NCBI GenBank assembly: GCA_965240325.2
Contig: OZ251237.1
Coordinates: 248,001-312,000 of the forward strand
Length of the DNA: 64,000 nt
Direction: 5' to 3'
From: Rebecca billardiae RCC1528
Lineage: Eukaryota > Protista > Haptophyta
This document shows, in pieces, positions 3,749 to 63,132 of the stretch (position 1 is its first letter; each line of letters opens with the position of its first letter). Below the pieces are notes generated by a model, which saw only the letters and a list, made by a program, of their open reading frames with translations, ran no database searches and was not told the DNA's origin. The translations under genes and the position numbers were made by a program.

Positions 3749-4860
3749 GTCTAGTTCAGGGGAAAAGTCCGGGAGCCGCCAACACCGTCGGTGTTGGTTC
3801 GCTGGGCATGGCTGCCCTTGTGGTGCGCGGTTGGCGACGAACATATGCCGAGCACGGCGCCAAGACAGCCCGCGCACAGCAGTAGAGACGGGCTAGTGGC
3901 GTCGTACGGCCCCAGCGCGCCCTACCGAGGCGCTTGAGCCGACATCTTGCGCCCAGTTGAGGCCGTACGTTCGTGCGGGCTCGTCGGCACGGCCATTGCC
4001 GGTGTTGGTTCAAACGTGCGGGCGCGGCGCGATGTAGCACACCAAGGTGAGGGGGACTGTGGTAGGGGACGTGTTGGTGTGGTCCTGGCGCGCGCTCTCC
4101 TAGCTCGGCCTTGTCGTACGCCCCATCGGTCTGGAGATTCACGCAAGTAAGGCATCGCTAACGGTTATACCACCACACAGACCATGTTTGGCCATTTCGT
4201 TATGTATTCATGGCTGTGAATGCTGCCTTGCATGCTGCATCACAGTGAGCCTGTTTGGCGCGTGCCGCGCGTGCCATTGCTGCTGACAAGTCGCAGAGCT
4301 ACAGAGGAGCATGTCACAGCACTATGCGTGTCTAAATCCCGGTGGTCGAGTACGCTCACACCTTGTCCGCAAAAGATCGAGCACGCCCATGCCTAGATGC
4401 AGCCGCACACGTGAAGACGGGTGACAGTTGGTGAGCCTTCATGTCAATCCGCGTACTCATACTTCCTCGGAGGCTCTGGCGGGGAAGGGACGCTAGGAGA
4501 GTGCGTGCCAGTACCGCACCAACACGTCCCCCACCACAGTCCCCCTCACCTTGGTGTGCTACATCGCGCCGCGCCCGCACGTTTGAACCAACACCGGCAA
4601 TGGCCGTGCCGACGAGCCCGCACGAACGTACGGCCTCAACTGGGCGCAAGATGTCGGCTCAAGCGCCTCGGTAGGGCGCGCTGGGGCCGTACGACGCCAC
4701 TAGCCCGTCTCTACTGTTGTGCACGGGCCGTCTTGGCGCCGTGCTCGGCATATGTTCGTCGTGAACCGCGCACCACAAGGGCAGCCATGCGCCCAGTGAA
4801 CCAACACCGACGGGTGTTGGTGCGTTTCACGAGCAGTCCGGGTGAATCCCTGAACTAGAC
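3749..4860. mobile_element. Foldback/MITE-like element with ~360-bp terminal inverted repeats, flanked by TA
   Basis: Arms ~3745-4104 and ~4492-4864 are imperfect reverse complements (CATAGTCTAGTTCAGGG / CCCTGAACTAGACTATG). The ~390-bp centre is non-coding. TA lies at 3747-3748 and 4861-4862. Confidence 0.75.
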
Positions 4861-55769: not shown

Positions 55770-58700
55770 TTCGAAACTGGTGCAACCATGATGTCTCGGA
55801 ATTTTGCAAACTTGTCCTTGGGTAGCGCCTTGGTAAGACAATCGGCGATGTTTTCCGATGTGTGTACCTTGATAATGTTGACTGCACCGAGGTCGACACA
55901 ATCTCGAATAAAATGGTGTCGTACGTCGATGTGCTTGGTGCGCTTATGATGAATGCTGTTCTTCGAGAGATCAATCGCCCCCTTGTTGTCCTCATGGATC
56001 ACAATGGGCGTCTTGGGAATATTGAGAATATCGCTGATGATGTCGCGTAGGTAAACTGCCTCTTTGGATCCTTCCGCGAGAGCGACATATTCGGCCTCAC
56101 ATGATGAGAGGGTTGTGATTGACTGCTTGAAGGTGCGCCACGATACTGGGCCGCCTGCGTGGAAGTAGATATAGCTTCCTGTCGAGCGGCGATCCTTTGT
56201 ATCGTTGGCCCAATCCGAGTCCACAAACATCTCCGTCCGTGGCTGAGTAGGTGTTGATTTGAAGGTGATGCCGGAATTCTTTGTCCCGGCCAAGTACCTG
56301 AGCACTCGCTTGGCACCTTTAAGGTCGTTCGAACTTGGGCTTGCCATGTACCTTGCCAACATGTTGACTGCGTAGCTGATGTCGGGTCGGCAGGTGTTCA
56401 TGATGAATAGTAGCGCTCCGACGATTGCTCGGTAGGTCTTTGATTCCTCCGACGAGCACGATGATGAATCGTCTGTCTCGATTGATGTCGGTTGCTCTGC
56501 TGCCGATCTGCATGGGTTGTCGACGGGCGTAATGTCGCTCATGTCGTGCTTCTTGAGGAGATCAGTGATGTACTGTGACATGGAGATAGTCGTCGACTTG
56601 GGCCCCTGGGTGATATTCATGCCCAGGAACGTCGTTGCTGGTCCCAAATCCCGGAGGGTAAATTCTTTTCGAATTTCCTCAATAATCGAGCTGGGCCTTG
56701 CGCTGTCGGGGGAGCTGCTCAGAATAAGCAGATCGTCCACGTACACTGCGATGACGTCGATGATGTCTCCGGAGATGCGGACGAAGATGCACTCCGACTG
56801 TGCGAGTTTCTTGAATCCTTTCTCTCGCAGTTTCTGGCTGAGGCGGAGGTGCCATCGTCGGCCGCTCTGCTTAAATCCTGGAAGGGCCATATCCCAGTCG
56901 GCCGCGACCACATGCCCCTCGGGTGGCTTGAGAGTACACGGGTACAGCGGGGGTAGCGTAGTGTAGATCTTCAGGCCGTCCTCCAAAGGGGCTTGGAGGT
57001 ACGCCGTACTCACGTCCGCGGAGTGGATGATCCAAGGTCTTTCTGGTGTTCGTAGCTCCGTCGTCAGTGCCAATAGGAGGCGTACGTTCTCGTACCGGAT
57101 AGTAGGCGAGAACACCTCGTCGTAATTGACTCCTTGAATCTGGCGGAAGCCTTGACCAACCAATCTTGCCTTGTACCGTTCGATGGTACCATCTGGATTG
57201 GCTTTGACCTTGAAGACCAGCTTCGATGGGATAATTGCTTTCCCTTTGGGAACAACGACGGGCGTGAATGTGCCCAGTCTGTCGTGGGCCTCGTATTCTT
57301 CCATGATAGCCCTTGTCCAATCGGATGCTTGCTTGCTCTCCATCGCTTCCTTGAACGATGTAGGTACCGGGATATCTGATGCGAGCTGCGCGAGCTGCGC
57401 GCGCGCGCGCGCGCGCCGCGTCGACGGGAAGTATGACTTGCCAGTCATGTTGCGGGTCCGCTGTGGGCGACGATCGGCGGAGGGAGGAGGCTGCTTCGGC
57501 TGCGGCGGCGCGTTGCTGGGCGATGGTCCGCCTCCAGCTCCGGGGCCGTCTTCATCACCGTCGTCGTCGCCGTCATCTCCCTTCTCGTCGTCGTCGGGGC
57601 CGTCCCCGTCATCCTCGTCGTCATCGTCGTCTGATTTCTCGTCCGGCGGTTGTGGATCGTCTCCTCCGCGCTCGGAGCCGCTGTCGGCGTCGCTGCTGCT
57701 GCTGGCAAACTCTTCGTCGCCCTCCTCGATGGTGTTGCTGTCATGGGTCTTACCAGCATCTGCACCTTGAGGAGGTCGCCGAGCGCTCCACGCCAGCAGG
57801 GGGTCCCGAATTTCGCGGATCTCCTTGAAATGCGTAGAGATTCGATCCAAAATGACTTGCTCGTTGAACTTGACATGCCGAGTGATGACGATTTTCCCGT
57901 CGTCGGCACTCAAAACGATGTATCCGTGCGATCGCTTGATGGCGCCTCGCTCGAAGATACCGTCAAATCCGTATCCCAATAAGATGCCCTCCCGCGCGCG
58001 CGGGAGTAGCTTGTTCTGCTTGTTGATCGACTGTACGAGGTAGATGCAGGGCGAGCCCCAGACTCTCAGCTTTTGCAGGAATGGCCCGGGCGAGGTGCCA
58101 AACATCAACTCGTGCGGTGAAACCAGCTTGCCATCGCTGGTAGGATGCTTGCTCATCAGGTTGCGTTGCGCGGCAGCGCACTTGGCTGCCCAATACCACC
58201 ATTTGTGGTGTACGCCTGAGAGGTACAGCATTGTCCTCGCGTCATTCATGATGACTCCGAGGCCACGTTCGGCGACGCCGTTCAGCTGCTGCGTGTGGGG
58301 GGGCGACATGTAGTTGCATAGCATGTCGTACCTGCGAAGGACTCGGTTCCAATTCTTTGAGTGTAACTCTCGGCCTCCGTCGAGGTGAATGGTGCATCCG
58401 GCGATGCCCTTGTTCTGCATGGTGGCGGATAGAGAGTTGGCTCCCATCTCGCTGGCCATGAGGTCGAGCTTCTCCGGCGCTTCAGCCTTGTTTTGCATGT
58501 CGTAGAAGCGCATGTATCCGGAAAAATCATCGATGAATAGAGTTCCCCACCTTGGAGTCTTGGCGGGCAGCCCGTTGATGGGCCCGATGACATCGTTGTG
58601 GAGCATCTCGAGCGGTCGAGTTGTCCTCTCACGTGTGCCCGGGAACGGCTTAGCTTTGAACTTGGCAACGTCGGAGGGCTGGTACGAGCAGGGCGATGCC

Positions 58701-61700
58701 TCCGACATCTTGTCGTTCGCGCGGTAGGTTGCGCGTACACGCTTGATATCGGCGTATCCTAGTCTGGATTGCCAGAGCGTGATCTTTCGCCCGTTCTTGA
58801 TCGGGTCGACGTCTGGTGGCATGTCGTCCGTGGTGGCCGGCATGGCTGTCTCGGCCTTGGGTACGACTGCCTTGAATCCGACAGTGTTGTCGGGGCGCAA
58901 ATGAACCCTCTTGGGGCCGATGCGGATGTATGGTCGTTCGTCGAACACCACAGCCATTCCGGCCGCGGCGAACGCGTTGACTGAAAAGAGAGTAGTATCG
59001 AGATCTTCGACTCCGACGACGTTTTCCAGGCACACCGGCACGGTTGTGTCTGAGTCGGCGTCGAGTAAGTATACGTACATGTCGCCTGCCTTGGATGCGT
59101 GTAGCTCAATGTCACGCTTGGCGACCTTAACAGACATGCTGATCGGATGAGCATTGTGTAGCAGGCCGAGGTTGATATCGACAAATGATTGGGACGCGCC
59201 AGAGTCCAGATACGCGTATTGCGTCGGCTCGAGATCTGCGTCATCGGGTTCCGGGTCGATGTCCTCGTCTTGCACCATCTGGGCTCGCGGCCTCCCCGCC
59301 CGCTTGGGGGGCGGAGGTACTTTGATGAACTTGCCGTCACGCCCGCCGGGCTTGGCGGGCGGCTTGAAGTTGCCCTGTTTTGGTGCACCGGGCGGCCTGG
59401 GTGGCCGCAAGTCTGGATGTAGCTTCCAGCACCGCTCTGCGGTGTGATTGCGTAGCCCGCAGTGCGAGCACGTGACGACTGGTTGTCGGCGGTCCGCCTC
59501 CTCAGTATTGAGAGCGTGCGCGGGACCGCCCCGCTTGGGGTCACGTTGCGTTGCCTGTCGTCCCTTGGGCGACTGAGTCCAACGCCTGTATGCGTCCTCG
59601 ATCTGGGCGGTGAGCTGTTCGGTCTGCGCCACGCATTGCTGGGGCGACATGGAACCGTAAATAGAGATGACGGTCAAGTAGACCTCTGGGTGCTCGTGCA
59701 TCCCATTGTATAGCTTGAACACGAGGAGTGTGGCGTCGTCTAGCTCTCGATAGCGTGATGCGCGTACCATCTCCACTGTTTGCTTGATCATCTCGGGGCC
59801 GCTCACCGGGGTCGGTCGGTCCGGGTAGAGCTTCTTGAACTCAGCTCGGAGCTCCGACATGGTCGATACGTTCAGCTCGTGCTCGAAGATTTCGAGCAGA
59901 GTATGTAAATTCAGGAAATTCTCATTCGGGTTCACGATGTGCCGTTTCGACTCGAGGTACGAAAAGAGACTTGGCAGCATCATGTCCTTGATACGCTTGA
60001 AAAGTACTTCCACCGATCGCTCGTAGACGATCGTCATTTGCATGATGGTGGTGTCCGCGTCCATGTTTGCGAATGCGGTTGCGTAAGGTTCCCGAATAGC
60101 ATTTTCGGCTGTCCACACGGCTGCCTCGGCCAGCGCGTATCCGGAGAGCCTGGCCTCGACGAGGGTGACCATGGACGACGTAGTGTCGGTCGCTCTTCCC
60201 TTGTAGGAAGCCTTGACCTCGGTGACTGCGTCCTTGATCGCTCCGTGGATAGCCATTTTCGATTTGATTGTGAAGAAATTCAGCTTGTAGCTTCCGACGC
60301 CGAGCTGGCTTGTCTGCACAGCCATCATTGCATGTGCGTCGGGCAAGTAGGTGCAAGCTTCGCTTCCATTTCTGCGCGTTCGCGGTGACGCGTGGGGCGA
60401 GCTTGTCTCAATGTGGTCCTCTGCTGTGGTATAGCTGTCAATGTCCGACGTAGAGGACTCGTCCCCATCGCTGCTCTGCTGTGCGCTGTTGTCGGCGCCA
60501 GTCGCGGCAGGCGGGTAGTTTGTGCCATGTCCAGGTGGACCGTCGTCAGCTGGCGAGTGTCCCTCGCCTGCTTCAGAAGTCAGCCCATAGAACTCGTCGT
60601 GCAGTAAGCATGCGACACCTGGCTGTAGGAGTGCGTCGTTACAATGGAACATGAGATCAAACTTGCTTTGGTGAAGCTCGTCCCTTTCCCGCACATAGTC
60701 TCCAACTGTGTAGTTGTGACCTTGATGCCGCTCTGCGGCTGCTGCGATGAAGCCTCCCGAGTAGATAGTGCATCGTTTAGATGGCCGCCAAGGGCAAATA
60801 TCATCGAGGCTGGCGCCTGCGTCATTCACGACGCTCAGGCTGCGGCGATCAGCCGCTGCGACGGGTCCGTCCTGTTGGTGGACGTGAATGCCATCATCAT
60901 CGATGTCAATCCCATCGTTCATCGCTGCAAACTGGATGATCTGCTCACATTCGAGCTGATGCTGAACCTGGATGGCGTCTGCGCATCGGTAGCTGCAGAC
61001 TCTGCCCATCCCACAGATGTTGCACTCAAGAAGGCAATGCCTCGATGTGCACGACTGATTGTCGCATGGCTGGCACGACTCTGGATCATCGGTGTCAATC
61101 TCACTCCACTGGCTGCTGTAGATGCCGTTGCCCAGGTTCTTGCGCGACGGGATCTCTGGGATGATGCAGTCGAAGGTCTCGCTCACACCGCACCAGCTGC
61201 TGGCAGACAGGAGGGGGTAAGTGGACAACAATGAGGACATGCGATGCCGATCGCGGGCATCTTGTTCCCATGCTGCCTTGCTGCAGCACAGGATGGTGTG
61301 GGAGTGGTTAGTCGGAGCGCTGCGCGTACCTCCCATGTCGTGGAAGAAGCTCTCCACGACGTCCATCGGCTTCTGGTCGGGCTCGTTGATGCCCATGAGG
61401 GCCACTTCGTAGAGCGCGGCGACGACCTCATCGATGCTCACCAGATCGCCCGGCGAGTCGCCGAGGTACTCGAGCTCCGGTGCGATCGCCTCGACTGGCT
61501 GCATCCGCTGTCCGGGATCGTGGGGGATCTGCCCCGTGTCGAAGGGGTAGTCCTTGAGCAGCTCCTGGAAGTCTGGGACGAGGCTGCTGATGGAGAGGTG
61601 GGGCGTCGCGCCCACCGGCGGCGATGGCCCCGGTGCTGCGACAAAGCTTGTCGGCTGGTCGTCGCGACTGGTGAGTCCGGGTCGCGCCGCCATCGTGGAA

Positions 61701-62467
61701 GACGTCCCAAAATCGCCGTCGGTCGGTGTCGGTGAGAGCGTGGACGACGACAGGTTGTCGCAGCTCGGCTGGAACGTGGGCGACGCCCAACATTCCGCCA
61801 TGGGCTTGGAGGGCCCGCTCCATCCCCGCGCTCCGCGGCGCTGCTGGGGATATGGGGACGGCTCGAACTCCAGCGATCCTCCCTGTTGCGTCTGCGCGCT
61901 GGGGGTCGTCATGGAGTAAGTTGGCGCGGCGCGCGGCGCGGCGGCGCTCTGCTCGATCGGCGCGTGTCGGTCGACCGCGCGCCGCTGGGCTTGGTTGTTG
62001 TGGTCCAGCTGCTGGAGCGGCTGGGACGGGTCCCGCTGCGGGGGCACGTGGATGTGTGACCCGAAGTGCTCCGGGCGTCGCGACTCGCCTTCAGGTACTT
62101 CGATGTGGTGGCGCCGCTTGCGGCGCACGTCCCTTGGTTCTCGGCGGCGCTCGGCGTCGTCACCGTAGCGGCCGTTGACTCGGTTGGGATCTTGCTCGAT
62201 CCGCTGGGAAGGTCCGAAGCGGGAGTCGAGGTTCTCGAATGAGCGCTGCCAGTGGATCGGGGTACGCGTCCACTTGCCTTGCGACAGCTGGGGAGGTCGA
62301 GAGTATTCGGTGCGGTGCGATTGGCGCTGTGCGTCCCGCATCGCCGGTACGATGTTGTTGTTGTTGGTCAAATCCTCGCGGATGTCGACCTTCGAGTTCG
62401 GGTGAAACCGCGCGCGTCCGCGCGGTGTGTTCCCACGTTGTCCGCCGCGAAGCTCCCATGAGCTCAT
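55766..62467 (-). CDS. Copia Gag-Pol polyprotein with a long N-terminal extension
   Basis: CSHCGLRNHTAERC (zinc knuckle), YLDSGAS (protease), HNDVIGP/LDGGRE/NGVAER (integrase), RYKARLV and YVDDLL (RT), DSDWA/EAEY/EDNKGA/ADCLTK (RNase H). One uninterrupted frame; first ATG at 62467. Confidence 0.97.
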   Translation of the reverse strand: MSSWELRGGQRGNTPRGRARFHPNSKVDIREDLTNNNNIVPAMRDAQRQSHRTEYSRPPQLSQGKWTRTPIHWQRSFENLDSRFGPSQRIEQDPNRVNGRYGDDAERRREPRDVRRKRRHHIEVPEGESRRPEHFGSHIHVPPQRDPSQPLQQLDHNNQAQRRAVDRHAPIEQSAAAPRAAPTYSMTTPSAQTQQGGSLEFEPSPYPQQRRGARGWSGPSKPMAECWASPTFQPSCDNLSSSTLSPTPTDGDFGTSSTMAARPGLTSRDDQPTSFVAAPGPSPPVGATPHLSISSLVPDFQELLKDYPFDTGQIPHDPGQRMQPVEAIAPELEYLGDSPGDLVSIDEVVAALYEVALMGINEPDQKPMDVVESFFHDMGGTRSAPTNHSHTILCCSKAAWEQDARDRHRMSSLLSTYPLLSASSWCGVSETFDCIIPEIPSRKNLGNGIYSSQWSEIDTDDPESCQPCDNQSCTSRHCLLECNICGMGRVCSYRCADAIQVQHQLECEQIIQFAAMNDGIDIDDDGIHVHQQDGPVAAADRRSLSVVNDAGASLDDICPWRPSKRCTIYSGGFIAAAAERHQGHNYTVGDYVRERDELHQSKFDLMFHCNDALLQPGVACLLHDEFYGLTSEAGEGHSPADDGPPGHGTNYPPAATGADNSAQQSSDGDESSTSDIDSYTTAEDHIETSSPHASPRTRRNGSEACTYLPDAHAMMAVQTSQLGVGSYKLNFFTIKSKMAIHGAIKDAVTEVKASYKGRATDTTSSMVTLVEARLSGYALAEAAVWTAENAIREPYATAFANMDADTTIMQMTIVYERSVEVLFKRIKDMMLPSLFSYLESKRHIVNPNENFLNLHTLLEIFEHELNVSTMSELRAEFKKLYPDRPTPVSGPEMIKQTVEMVRASRYRELDDATLLVFKLYNGMHEHPEVYLTVISIYGSMSPQQCVAQTEQLTAQIEDAYRRWTQSPKGRQATQRDPKRGGPAHALNTEEADRRQPVVTCSHCGLRNHTAERCWKLHPDLRPPRPPGAPKQGNFKPPAKPGGRDGKFIKVPPPPKRAGRPRAQMVQDEDIDPEPDDADLEPTQYAYLDSGASQSFVDINLGLLHNAHPISMSVKVAKRDIELHASKAGDMYVYLLDADSDTTVPVCLENVVGVEDLDTTLFSVNAFAAAGMAVVFDERPYIRIGPKRVHLRPDNTVGFKAVVPKAETAMPATTDDMPPDVDPIKNGRKITLWQSRLGYADIKRVRATYRANDKMSEASPCSYQPSDVAKFKAKPFPGTRERTTRPLEMLHNDVIGPINGLPAKTPRWGTLFIDDFSGYMRFYDMQNKAEAPEKLDLMASEMGANSLSATMQNKGIAGCTIHLDGGRELHSKNWNRVLRRYDMLCNYMSPPHTQQLNGVAERGLGVIMNDARTMLYLSGVHHKWWYWAAKCAAAQRNLMSKHPTSDGKLVSPHELMFGTSPGPFLQKLRVWGSPCIYLVQSINKQNKLLPRAREGILLGYGFDGIFERGAIKRSHGYIVLSADDGKIVITRHVKFNEQVILDRISTHFKEIREIRDPLLAWSARRPPQGADAGKTHDSNTIEEGDEEFASSSSDADSGSERGGDDPQPPDEKSDDDDDEDDGDGPDDDEKGDDGDDDGDEDGPGAGGGPSPSNAPPQPKQPPPSADRRPQRTRNMTGKSYFPSTRRARARAQLAQLASDIPVPTSFKEAMESKQASDWTRAIMEEYEAHDRLGTFTPVVVPKGKAIIPSKLVFKVKANPDGTIERYKARLVGQGFRQIQGVNYDEVFSPTIRYENVRLLLALTTELRTPERPWIIHSADVSTAYLQAPLEDGLKIYTTLPPLYPCTLKPPEGHVVAADWDMALPGFKQSGRRWHLRLSQKLREKGFKKLAQSECIFVRISGDIIDVIAVYVDDLLILSSSPDSARPSSIIEEIRKEFTLRDLGPATTFLGMNITQGPKSTTISMSQYITDLLKKHDMSDITPVDNPCRSAAEQPTSIETDDSSSCSSEESKTYRAIVGALLFIMNTCRPDISYAVNMLARYMASPSSNDLKGAKRVLRYLAGTKNSGITFKSTPTQPRTEMFVDSDWANDTKDRRSTGSYIYFHAGGPVSWRTFKQSITTLSSCEAEYVALAEGSKEAVYLRDIISDILNIPKTPIVIHEDNKGAIDLSKNSIHHKRTKHIDVRHHFIRDCVDLGAVNIIKVHTSENIADCLTKALPKDKFAKFRDIMVAPVSN

Positions 62468-62972
62468 GATTGGCACTTCGTGCGCTGGCGGAGGTTCGCT
62501 CTTTGGCGATGGTGGCGCAGGGGTCTGGCCCTGCTTGCTGATCAGTTCGGTTTTGTTGTGTGGCTGGTGTAGCTCCAGATCGCTGAGAAAAACTTTTGTA
62601 GGGTTCTCACGAAGGACTCATCCCAGAACTTTCGTGATTAGAAAGTTTGGAGATGCTTCTCGGCTTCTGATTGCGAAGGCACGTTCTCGGAATGATCTGA
62701 TAGTGCATTGCCCTGCGAAGGCTTGAGAACATCTCAGGAGGCTTTGATTCCTGGATTGTTCCGCGACGCTTGTTGGCCATTATGAAATGCACGATGAATG
62801 ATGATGAATGAATTGGTGCACTGGACGTGATTAAAACCGACAGTTGAGGTCGATGATAAGGTTTTGAATTGGAATGAAGCCTCAGCATGGTGGCGCTTAG
62901 AATTGCTCAGCGCCTTGAGATTGAAACCTCGAGCTGGGGAATGGCGCCAATGGCTGCCTTGGGCTTTTGACA
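62467..62972 (-). repeat. 5' LTR
   Basis: 506 bp, matches 55253-55758. Confidence 0.97.
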
Positions 62973-63132
62973 TAACTCCGCGGAGCCGCCAGAGTCTGGC
63001 AGACTATCAGTGACTCATGAGTGAGGGCCAGGCCGGCCAGGGCGCCAGGCCAGCGCGGGCCTGCGCCGTTGCACCGGACTCCACGCCTCACGCCGTCACG
63101 GCGGGGCGCTCATGCTCGCTCAGCCTCAGCCC

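What the first reader, a model, noticed from the sequence alone, without database searches (positions are those of the whole stretch)
60330..62467. Copia polyprotein with a ~710-aa pre-Gag extension containing a MYND-like zinc finger
Seen: the frame is open from the LTR edge through Pol (over 2200 aa). At ~60947-61076 it encodes CQPC-DNQSCTSRHCLLE-CNIC-GMGRV-CSYRC-ADAIQVQ-HQLEC, which matches the MYND spacing CxxC..CxxC..CSxxC..HxxxC. An earlier CCSKAAWEQDARDRH may be a degenerate half-finger. Known: typical copia polyproteins are much shorter and lack such a domain, and MYND fingers bind PxLxP motifs of chromatin and co-repressor proteins. Inference: a captured host-interaction module (anti-silencing or targeting) defining an unusual copia lineage.
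Basis: partly seen in the sequence, partly recalled or inferred. Interest (0 to 1): 0.8.

Follow-up and report, generated by a model that had tools for sequence, protein, structure and literature searches.

The report
Copia retrotransposon with long pre-Gag extension
A young, apparently active copia-type jumping gene makes one giant protein whose first ~713 residues, ahead of the normal capsid part, are a fast-changing floppy stretch followed by a conserved cysteine-rich zinc-finger module with MYND-like spacing, an unusual add-on whose MYND identity and function remain unproven.

Summary
On the minus strand lies an intact Ty1/copia element (55253-62972) with identical 506-bp LTRs and a 5-bp target duplication. 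Its single 2233-aa frame starts at an ATG formed by the last LTR base. Some 713 aa precede the Gag-like part.

The extension is coding. All 22 copies found keep it open. Three subfamilies differ by in-frame indels, and 37 ATGs lie before MMAVQ.

It has two parts. The first ~450 aa are Ser/Pro/Arg-rich, length-variable and evolve about neutrally (dN/dS 1.1-1.5). The last ~260 aa are constrained (dN/dS ~0.35) and hold the finger at 60947-61075.

The finger also hits, at 43% identity, an element family only ~48-50% identical in Gag and integrase.

MYND membership is not shown. The ligand spacing fits and a language-model search lands on zf-MYND clusters. But Pfam, PDB sequence searches, 1.84 billion proteins and two AlphaFold models give nothing, and the first Cys is Arg in subfamily B.

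No host donor gene was found, although the host has at least 150 MYND loci. Function is inferred only.

The scan's first readers noted the same family on other DNA of this genome.

Verdict: a real, lineage-specific accessory region; a new variant of a known kind.

The parts
55253..62972 (-). Complete Ty1/copia LTR retrotransposon, 7720 bp
   Evidence: LTR pair, TG..CA ends and flanking 5-bp duplication AGTTA at 62973-62977 and 55248-55252
62467..62972 (-). 5' LTR, 506 bp
   Evidence: 100% identical to the 3' LTR. Its last base is the A of the polyprotein ATG
55253..55758 (-). 3' LTR, 506 bp
   Evidence: Preceded by the purine tract GAGGGGGCG at 55759-55767, which overlaps the stop codon
55766..62467 (-). 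Single polyprotein frame, 2233 aa from the first ATG, stop codon included
61112..62467 (-). Hypervariable N-part of the extension (452 aa), Ser/Pro/Arg-rich and probably disordered
   Evidence: No stops in frame against 4-5 in the other forward frames. GC3 is 0.77-0.84. 14 of 18 A-B indels are multiples of 3, p=1.4e-4. dN/dS is 1.1-1.5. Variable sites by codon position among 11 B copies are 26/17/26. Length is 452, 434 and 234 aa in subfamilies A, B and C
60329..61111 (-). Conserved C-part of the extension (261 aa): acidic run, zinc finger, conserved core, acidic/Ser-rich linker
   Evidence: 90-94% aa identity among subfamilies. dN/dS is 0.35 for A vs B. No homologue in Pfam, PDB or 1.84 billion proteins
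60947..61075 (-). Cys-rich finger with MYND-type ligand spacing: C-x2-C-x13-C-x2-C-x5-C-x3-C-x7-H-x3-C
   Evidence: Invariant except the first Cys, which is Arg in subfamily B. 43% identical at E about 4e-6 in a distant element family. Nearest language-model clusters are zf-MYND
59387..60328 (-). Gag-like region starting at MMAVQ, with a CCHC knuckle at 59429-59470
   Evidence: Homology to other copia Gag regions starts here. dN/dS is 0.08. Knuckle coordinates
56510..58084 (-). Integrase C-terminal SH3-like domain (57854-58084) followed by copia-type reverse transcriptase (56510-57271)
   Evidence: Pfam SH3_retrovirus 1e-13 and RVT_2 3.2e-50

Best explanation
This is a recently active Ty1/copia retrotransposon whose Gag-Pol polyprotein starts at an ATG created at the junction of the 5' LTR and the primer-site region. 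It therefore carries a 713-aa region in front of Gag. That region has two parts. The first ~450 aa are a low-complexity, probably disordered leader. Its sequence and length drift almost freely, but it must stay open because ribosomes have to read through it to reach Gag-Pol. The last ~260 aa are a constrained module built around a zinc-binding, cross-brace-type Cys7His finger with MYND-like spacing. I infer that this module is a protein-protein interaction domain fused to the N-terminus of Gag. It would tie the particle or its precursor to a host or element partner. This is an old feature of the local lineage, not a recent capture. Shown: the anatomy, that the region is coding, the two-part constraint, and conservation of the finger in a distant family. 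Inferred: zinc binding, the MYND-type fold, and the binding role.
For: Intact young element: identical LTRs, target duplication, purine tract, RVT_2 and integrase SH3 hits. All 22 copies keep extension and Gag in one frame. Subfamilies A, B and C differ by many indels, yet 14 of 18 A-B gaps are multiples of 3 (p=1.4e-4), and C lacks a stretch of about 240 aa and stays in frame. GC3 is 0.77-0.84, and there are no stops in frame against 4-5 in the other forward frames. 37 ATGs lie between the first ATG and MMAVQ, and the first ATG has A at -3. dN/dS by segment for A vs B: 1.36, 1.12, 0.35, then Gag 0.08 and Pol 0.18. Copy-to-copy variation has no third-position bias in the N-part (26/17/26) and a strong one in Gag (4/7/38). 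The finger region alone hits, at 43% identity and E=4e-6, a 1965-aa open frame. That frame's Gag and protease-integrase parts are 48% and 50% identical to ours, and the finger-to-Gag spacing is about the same. The ligand spacing is non-random. The nearest ESM-Atlas clusters are zf-MYND (0.93, 171 features) and zf-Mss51; for the finger alone they are zf-MYND at 0.87, 0.85 and 0.84. At E about 1, one of two insignificant non-element hits of the 273-aa piece falls on a true zf-MYND locus, starting at the position of the finger's first Cys.
Against: Pfam finds no zf-MYND, zf-HIT or any other family, even at E<=10 on the isolated finger. phmmer and hmmsearch against PDB find no MYND chain. 1.84 billion representative proteins give no hit at E<=0.001. 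The AlphaFold model of the 273-aa piece is useless (pLDDT 29). The 65-aa finger model reaches pLDDT 75 in only one of five models, is a plain helical hairpin, and matches nothing specific. The first Cys is Arg in the most numerous subfamily, B, so either another Cys serves as ligand or that site is not needed. The language-model scores are leads only, and recognition was below the tool's reliability mark. No RNA or protein data exist: the runs found are low-depth contigs of unknown kind. I could not read the distant family's finger, so retention of its ligands there is not verified.
Confidence: 0.55

Rival explanations
1. The conserved module binds zinc but is not a MYND relative. It would be a lineage-specific Cys-rich domain, for example an extra nucleic-acid-binding or chaperone module that helps package or dimerise the element's RNA, and the MYND spacing is convergent.
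For: Every profile, sequence and fold test for MYND failed. The segment holds nine Cys and two His, more than a MYND needs. The first CxxC is not conserved in subfamily B. The typical MYND Tyr, Gln and Trp positions are absent (sequence, compared with the MYND consensus from my own knowledge).
Against: Six of seven ligand spacings equal the MYND pattern (the consensus is from my own knowledge). All the top language-model neighbours of the isolated finger are zf-MYND. Gag already has a canonical CCHC knuckle for RNA binding at 59429-59470.
Confidence: 0.28
2. The variable N-part is not a passive spacer. It is under diversifying selection, for example as a decoy or antagonist in a conflict with a host restriction or silencing factor.
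For: dN/dS is 1.1-1.5 in all three between-subfamily comparisons. Among B copies, 45 codons change the amino acid and 13 change only synonymously. Length changes are large.
Against: The values are close to 1 and come from a simple counting method at 27-50% aa identity, where alignment error inflates dN. Variation is equal at all three codon positions, which is what neutrality predicts. Nothing in this part is conserved across subfamilies.
Confidence: 0.12
3. The extension is a long leader that is not normally translated. Gag-Pol would start at MMAVQ from a spliced, internally initiated or IRES-driven message, and the open frame is incidental.
For: A Met sits at the start of the Gag homology here, and also in the distant relative P0001. 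There are no expression data. GC-rich sequence has few stops anyway: 4-5 per 452 codons in the other forward frames.
Against: The frame is open in 22 copies and three diverged subfamilies. Indels are mostly multiples of 3 (p=1.4e-4). GC3 is elevated. dN/dS is 0.35 in the last 260 aa. The finger is conserved inside the same frame in a family only 48% identical in Gag. 37 ATGs precede MMAVQ.
Confidence: 0.05

Closest known systems
Ty1/copia (Pseudoviridae) LTR retrotransposons
   Same: LTRs with TG..CA ends, 5-bp target duplication, purine tract, single Gag-Pol frame, CCHC knuckle, integrase ahead of RVT_2 reverse transcriptase.
   Different: 713 aa ahead of Gag. The start codon is formed at the LTR/primer-site junction. 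The integrase N-terminal HHCC ligands are mostly replaced. A screen of 4,811 plant copia consensus sequences found no gained domain at all (PMC9289625).
zf-MYND (PF01753) protein-interaction fingers
   Same: Ligand order and six of seven spacings, with CS at the fifth ligand. The nearest language-model clusters are zf-MYND.
   Different: No HMM hit. The first spacer is 13 residues. The consensus Tyr, Gln and Trp are lacking. The first Cys is not conserved. The fold is not confirmed.
[quoted passage not shown]
   Same: A disordered, sequence-tolerant region ahead of the capsid fold of a copia-group Gag. In Ty1 it is required for particle assembly and can be swapped for foreign prion domains.
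   Different: Here the region is about three times longer than the roughly 158 aa ahead of the Ty1 capsid fold, and it is followed by a structured Cys-rich module. No assembly role has been tested.
Chromodomain of chromoviruses (Ty3/gypsy), as summarised in PMC9289625
   Same: An accessory protein-interaction module fixed in an LTR-retrotransposon lineage.
   Different: That domain sits at the integrase C-terminus and is known to direct integration to heterochromatin. This one sits on Gag, in a copia element, and its partner is unknown.
P0001, a 1901-aa copia polyprotein from metagenome assembly ERZ27313177 (L041)
   Same: The only outside relative found: 28% identity over Gag, protease and integrase. 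It also has about 380 aa ahead of Gag, with a small Cys cluster after an acidic run, and its frame appears to start inside the LTR-like terminal repeat of its contig.
   Different: Its pre-Gag region has no significant similarity to ours, no complete eight-ligand pattern and no Pfam hit.

Membership tests
Ty1/copia LTR retrotransposon | Direct LTRs with TG..CA ends and a 5-bp target-site duplication | tested here: met
   506-bp LTRs, 100% identical, TGTC...ATCA, duplication AGTTA
Ty1/copia LTR retrotransposon | Copia-type reverse transcriptase (RVT_2) with integrase upstream of it | tested here: met
   RVT_2 at 3.2e-50. The integrase SH3-like domain (1e-13) and the integrase core motifs lie upstream of RT
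Ty1/copia LTR retrotransposon | Primer-binding site complementary to a tRNA 3' end next to the 5' LTR | tested here: inconclusive
   The sequence after the LTR is TGAGCTCAYGGG, conserved in subfamilies A, B and C, but it is not a TGG... tRNA-end match. No tRNA partner was identified
zf-MYND (PF01753) | Match to the family profile at or above its gathering score | tested here: not met
   No hit for the 710-aa, 270-aa or 87-aa pieces at E<=1 or E<=10. None of the 150 best genome hits to PF01753 lies in an element copy
zf-MYND (PF01753) | Eight ligands with spacing C-x2-C-x(n)-C-x2-C-x(4-6)-C-x3-C-x(7-8)-H-x3-C | tested here: met
   Present in subfamilies A and C with n=13. In B the first Cys is Arg, and other Cys are available nearby. 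The consensus itself comes from my own knowledge
zf-MYND (PF01753) | Cross-brace two-zinc fold | tested here: inconclusive
   pLDDT 29 for the 273-aa model. pLDDT 75 in one of five models for the 65-aa piece, which is helical with no specific match: Foldseek 0 hits, VIA Z<=4.3, only generic helices in the Atlas
zf-MYND (PF01753) | Binding of PxLxP-type peptide motifs | not testable with these tools
   Needs a binding assay
zf-HIT (PF04438) | Match to the family profile | tested here: not met
   No Pfam hit at E<=10

The most novel reading that the evidence does not exclude
The Gag-borne finger is a true, highly diverged MYND-type tether taken long ago from the host's very large MYND gene family. 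It binds a host chromatin or transcription factor, and so sets the family's striking preference for short AT-rich (TATA-like) sites in a 70-80% GC genome, or shields the element from silencing. That would be the first targeting or host-interaction module carried on Gag in a copia element. It might also compensate for this lineage's loss of the integrase HHCC finger.
Probability: 0.12. Interest if true: 0.75.

Novelty: new variant of a known kind. Interest (0 to 1): 0.5.

Why it matters
Gains of extra protein domains are rare in LTR retrotransposons and especially rare in copia elements: a large plant screen found none (PMC9289625). Here an evidently active family, with 22 copies and identical LTRs, carries a conserved and otherwise orphan Cys-rich module on the N-terminus of Gag. 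A freely drifting 230-450-aa leader sits in front of it, and the module is shared with a much more distant family in the same genome. The system allows two direct tests. One is what a Gag-borne interaction domain does for a retrotransposon: assembly, targeting or escape from silencing. The other is how much disordered sequence a polyprotein can carry. It also warns annotators that such extensions are invisible to Pfam-based pipelines.

Tried and rejected
1. Pfam on the extension, the 270-aa piece, the 87-aa finger and Gag: nothing.
2. phmmer of aa 4-712 against 1.84 billion representatives: 0 hits.
3. PDB sequence searches, single sequence and profile: only chance hits, a disintegrin and collagen IV at E>2.
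4. AlphaFold on the 273-aa piece: pLDDT 29. On the 65-aa finger: one model at 75, the others about 40. Foldseek against PDB gave 0 hits, VIA wide gave generic helices at Z<=4.3, and the ESM-Atlas shape search gave ABC-transporter helices. All uninformative.
5. Sequencing runs: no RNA run. Four runs were laid on 57400-63100 (5701 letters, within the operators' limit). Two held only short low-depth contigs and two held nothing, with no joints. Run X2, from a second organism label, holds pieces of the extension at 92-100% identity.
6. Metagenome contig scan with the conserved part: 467 pattern matches, none a relative.
7. Search for a host donor gene with the 273-aa and 65-aa pieces: only element copies, plus insignificant hits.
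8. Comparison with the pre-Gag region of P0001: no significant similarity.
9. Reading the finger of the distant family (C15:411413-411574) was not possible.
10. The 'half-finger' CCSKAAWEQDARDRH was rejected as a finger.
Full report
**What is there**

The finding lies on the minus strand. A direct repeat of 506 bp at 100% identity (55253-55758 and 62467-62972) bounds a 7720-bp element. It has TG..CA ends, a 5-bp target duplication (AGTTA) and a purine tract GAGGGGGCG just ahead of the 3' LTR.

One frame runs from 62476 to the stop at 55766. Its first ATG is at 62467-62465, so the A is the last base of the 5' LTR. From that ATG the product is 2233 aa.

Pfam sees a copia-type reverse transcriptase (RVT_2, 3.2e-50) and the integrase SH3-like domain (1e-13). 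A CCHC knuckle, a protease motif and integrase core motifs are readable in the translation. The Gag homology to other copia elements begins about 16 residues after MMAVQ at 60328.

**Is the extension coding?**

Searching the whole 72-Mb assembly found 22 near-identical Gag copies (98-100%). In every copy fetched, the stretch from the LTR-edge ATG through the finger into Gag is one open frame.

The copies fall into three subfamilies:
- A: ours, 3-4 copies.
- B: about 12 copies, 2227-aa frames, LTRs of about 553 bp at 99.5-100% identity in the four copies examined.
- C: about 6 copies, 1994-2058 aa.

The subfamilies are nearly the same in Gag-Pol but differ strongly in the first ~450 aa. There A and B share 27-50% aa identity. 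C lacks the stretch matching about residues 220-460 of A and stays in frame.

A nucleotide alignment made without reference to the protein shows 14 of 18 A-B gaps to be multiples of three (p=1.4e-4). The frame has no stop, against 4-5 in each of the other forward frames. GC3 is 0.77-0.84, above total GC.

Between the first ATG and MMAVQ there are 37 ATGs, and the first ATG has a purine at -3. Leaky scanning to MMAVQ is therefore not credible.

One copy (contig C5) has a 2-nt indel at about codon 33. It ends the frame from the first ATG, and the long frame there continues from the second ATG 8 nt further on. That is the only defect seen in the region.

**Two parts with different constraint**

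Nei-Gojobori estimates for A vs B:

| Segment (residues counted from codon 62476-62474) | dN/dS |
|---|---|
| 4-270 | 1.36 |
| 271-445 | 1.12 |
| 446-712 | 0.35 |
| Gag | 0.08 |
| Pol | 0.18 |

Among 11 B copies, the variable sites by codon position are:

| Segment | Position 1 | Position 2 | Position 3 |
|---|---|---|---|
| N-part | 26 | 17 | 26 |
| Conserved part | 2 | 4 | 6 |
| Gag and downstream | 4 | 7 | 38 |

The N-part is Ser/Pro/Arg-rich, with 23% order-promoting residues against 30-33% in Gag and Pol. It is 452, 434 and 234 aa long in A, B and C.

I read it as a disordered leader whose sequence is free to drift but whose frame is held open, because translation starts upstream of it. 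Diversifying selection is a possible but unproven alternative.

The last 261 aa (60329-61111) comprise an acidic run, the finger, a conserved core of about 145 aa, and an acidic/Ser-rich linker. They are 90-94% identical among subfamilies.

**The finger**

The finger spans 60947-61075 and reads C-x2-C-x13-C-x2-C-x5-C-x3-C-x7-H-x3-C. This pattern occurs nowhere in 112,556 aa of six-frame background from the window, and in none of 200,000 shuffles of the 65-aa segment. All ligands are invariant except the first Cys, which is Arg in subfamily B. Three further Cys and a His lie in the 13-residue spacer and could substitute.

For MYND:
- The spacing from the third ligand onward equals the MYND consensus (my own knowledge).
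- The ESM-Atlas feature search puts zf-MYND (0.93, 171 shared features) and zf-Mss51 (0.92) first for the 273-aa piece. It puts three zf-MYND clusters (0.87-0.84) first for the finger alone. These are leads, not proof.
- One of the two insignificant non-element hits of the 273-aa piece in the genome (E about 1) is a true zf-MYND locus. The alignment starts at the position of the finger's first Cys.

Against MYND:
- No Pfam hit of any kind, even at E<=10 on the isolated finger.
- No PDB sequence hit.
- No hit in 1.84 billion proteins.
- Two AlphaFold models that cannot decide. The 273-aa model has pLDDT 29. The 65-aa model reaches 75 in one of five models and is a helical hairpin with only generic matches.

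Membership in zf-MYND is therefore not established. 'MYND-like spacing' is the most that can be said.

**Age and origin**

The finger piece hits four more places at 43% identity (E 4e-6 to 1.4e-5). One lies in a 1965-aa open frame on contig C15. That same frame holds a Gag 48% identical and a protease-integrase 50% identical to ours.

There the finger sits about 293 aa ahead of the Gag match, against 267 aa here. From the coordinates, only about 130 aa precede the finger. So the finger is an old, retained part of this local copia lineage, while the leader in front of it has grown and shrunk. Ligand conservation there is unverified.

The finger region has the element's own composition (GC 0.56, GC3 0.62). 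The N-part is closer to the very GC-rich DNA flanking the element (GC 0.63-0.70).

The host has at least 150 zf-MYND loci above the Pfam cut-off, so a donor pool exists. No donor is detectable, and 'capture' remains a guess.

Outside this genome the only relative is P0001: 1901 aa, 28% identity over Gag-integrase, from a metagenome assembly. It also has about 380 aa ahead of Gag, with a small Cys cluster, but no significant similarity to our extension.

**How it probably works**

Shown:
- The element is intact and young.
- The extension is part of the polyprotein frame.
- Only its last ~260 aa are constrained.
- The finger is conserved across families.

Inferred:
- The finger binds zinc and acts as a protein-interaction module on the N-terminus of Gag.
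- The leader is a tolerated disordered region, comparable in kind to the disordered N-terminal prion-like region of Ty1 Gag. That region is needed for particle assembly yet is replaceable by foreign sequences (PMC10372613).

Nothing here tests targeting or anti-silencing.

**Comparison and novelty**

Accessory domains are known in LTR retrotransposons: chromodomains, envelope-like genes and an AlkB demethylase. They are rare, and a screen of 4,811 plant copia consensus sequences found none (PMC9289625). Literature searches for MYND together with copia or a polyprotein found nothing relevant.

I class this as a new variant of a known kind. First readers of this scan noted the same family on other pieces of this genome (s1-355174, s1-350685), and noted the junction ATG (s1-357948). 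Those notes are not independent evidence.

**Limits**

- There are no expression data.
- The organism is not identified.
- The dN/dS values for the N-part are rough at this divergence.

Noticed in passing
window 11201-17011 and 36848-42661 (minus strand): Two complete rDNA units (SSU, 5.8S, LSU) lie 25.65 kb apart, with about 17 kb of other GC-rich sequence between them. They are not in a tight tandem array. The copia element sits about 11 kb from the second unit.
   Followed up: partly
window 55248-55252 and 62973-62977; L031-L040 element flanks: Nearly all insertions examined sit in short AT-rich sites (duplications such as AGTTA, ATATA, ATATC, GTATC, CGTAT, often inside (TA)n), in a genome of 70-80% GC. 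This suggests a strong target preference.
   Followed up: partly
G000, about 50 places, e.g. C30:74187-75158, C25:645920-646621, C17:839289-840260: There is an abundant second family with a Gag 49% identical to ours in open frames of about 880-915 aa. It has no protease-integrase match beside it and no finger match.
   Followed up: partly
G000 genome-wide: The host genome has at least 150 zf-MYND matches above the Pfam cut-off (264 candidates), a very large expansion of this domain.
   Followed up: no
window 58643-58777 (minus strand): Three of the four integrase N-terminal HHCC zinc ligands are replaced: LWQSRLGY in place of LWHxRLGH, and CSYQ in place of CxxC. The catalytic core motifs are present. 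The distant relative P0001 lacks most of them too. The same point was made in note s1-360856.
   Followed up: partly
window 62449-62467 (minus strand): The sequence after the 5' LTR (TGAGCTCAYGGG, shared by subfamilies A, B and C) is not a standard TGG... tRNA-end primer site. Together with the LTR's last base it forms the polyprotein ATG.
   Followed up: partly
window 3806-4104 / 4492-4790, 269-548 / 1594-1873, and 1361-1597 / 1995-2231: A 299-nt inverted repeat at 97% with a 387-nt spacer, and perfect direct repeats of 280 and 237 nt near the window start. Their nature was not examined.
   Followed up: no
window 60213-60393, 60465-60690, 61018-61168: Contigs from a run labelled as a different organism (X2, organism B) carry pieces of the extension at 92-100% identity. 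The family, with its extension, probably also exists in a related strain or species.
   Followed up: no
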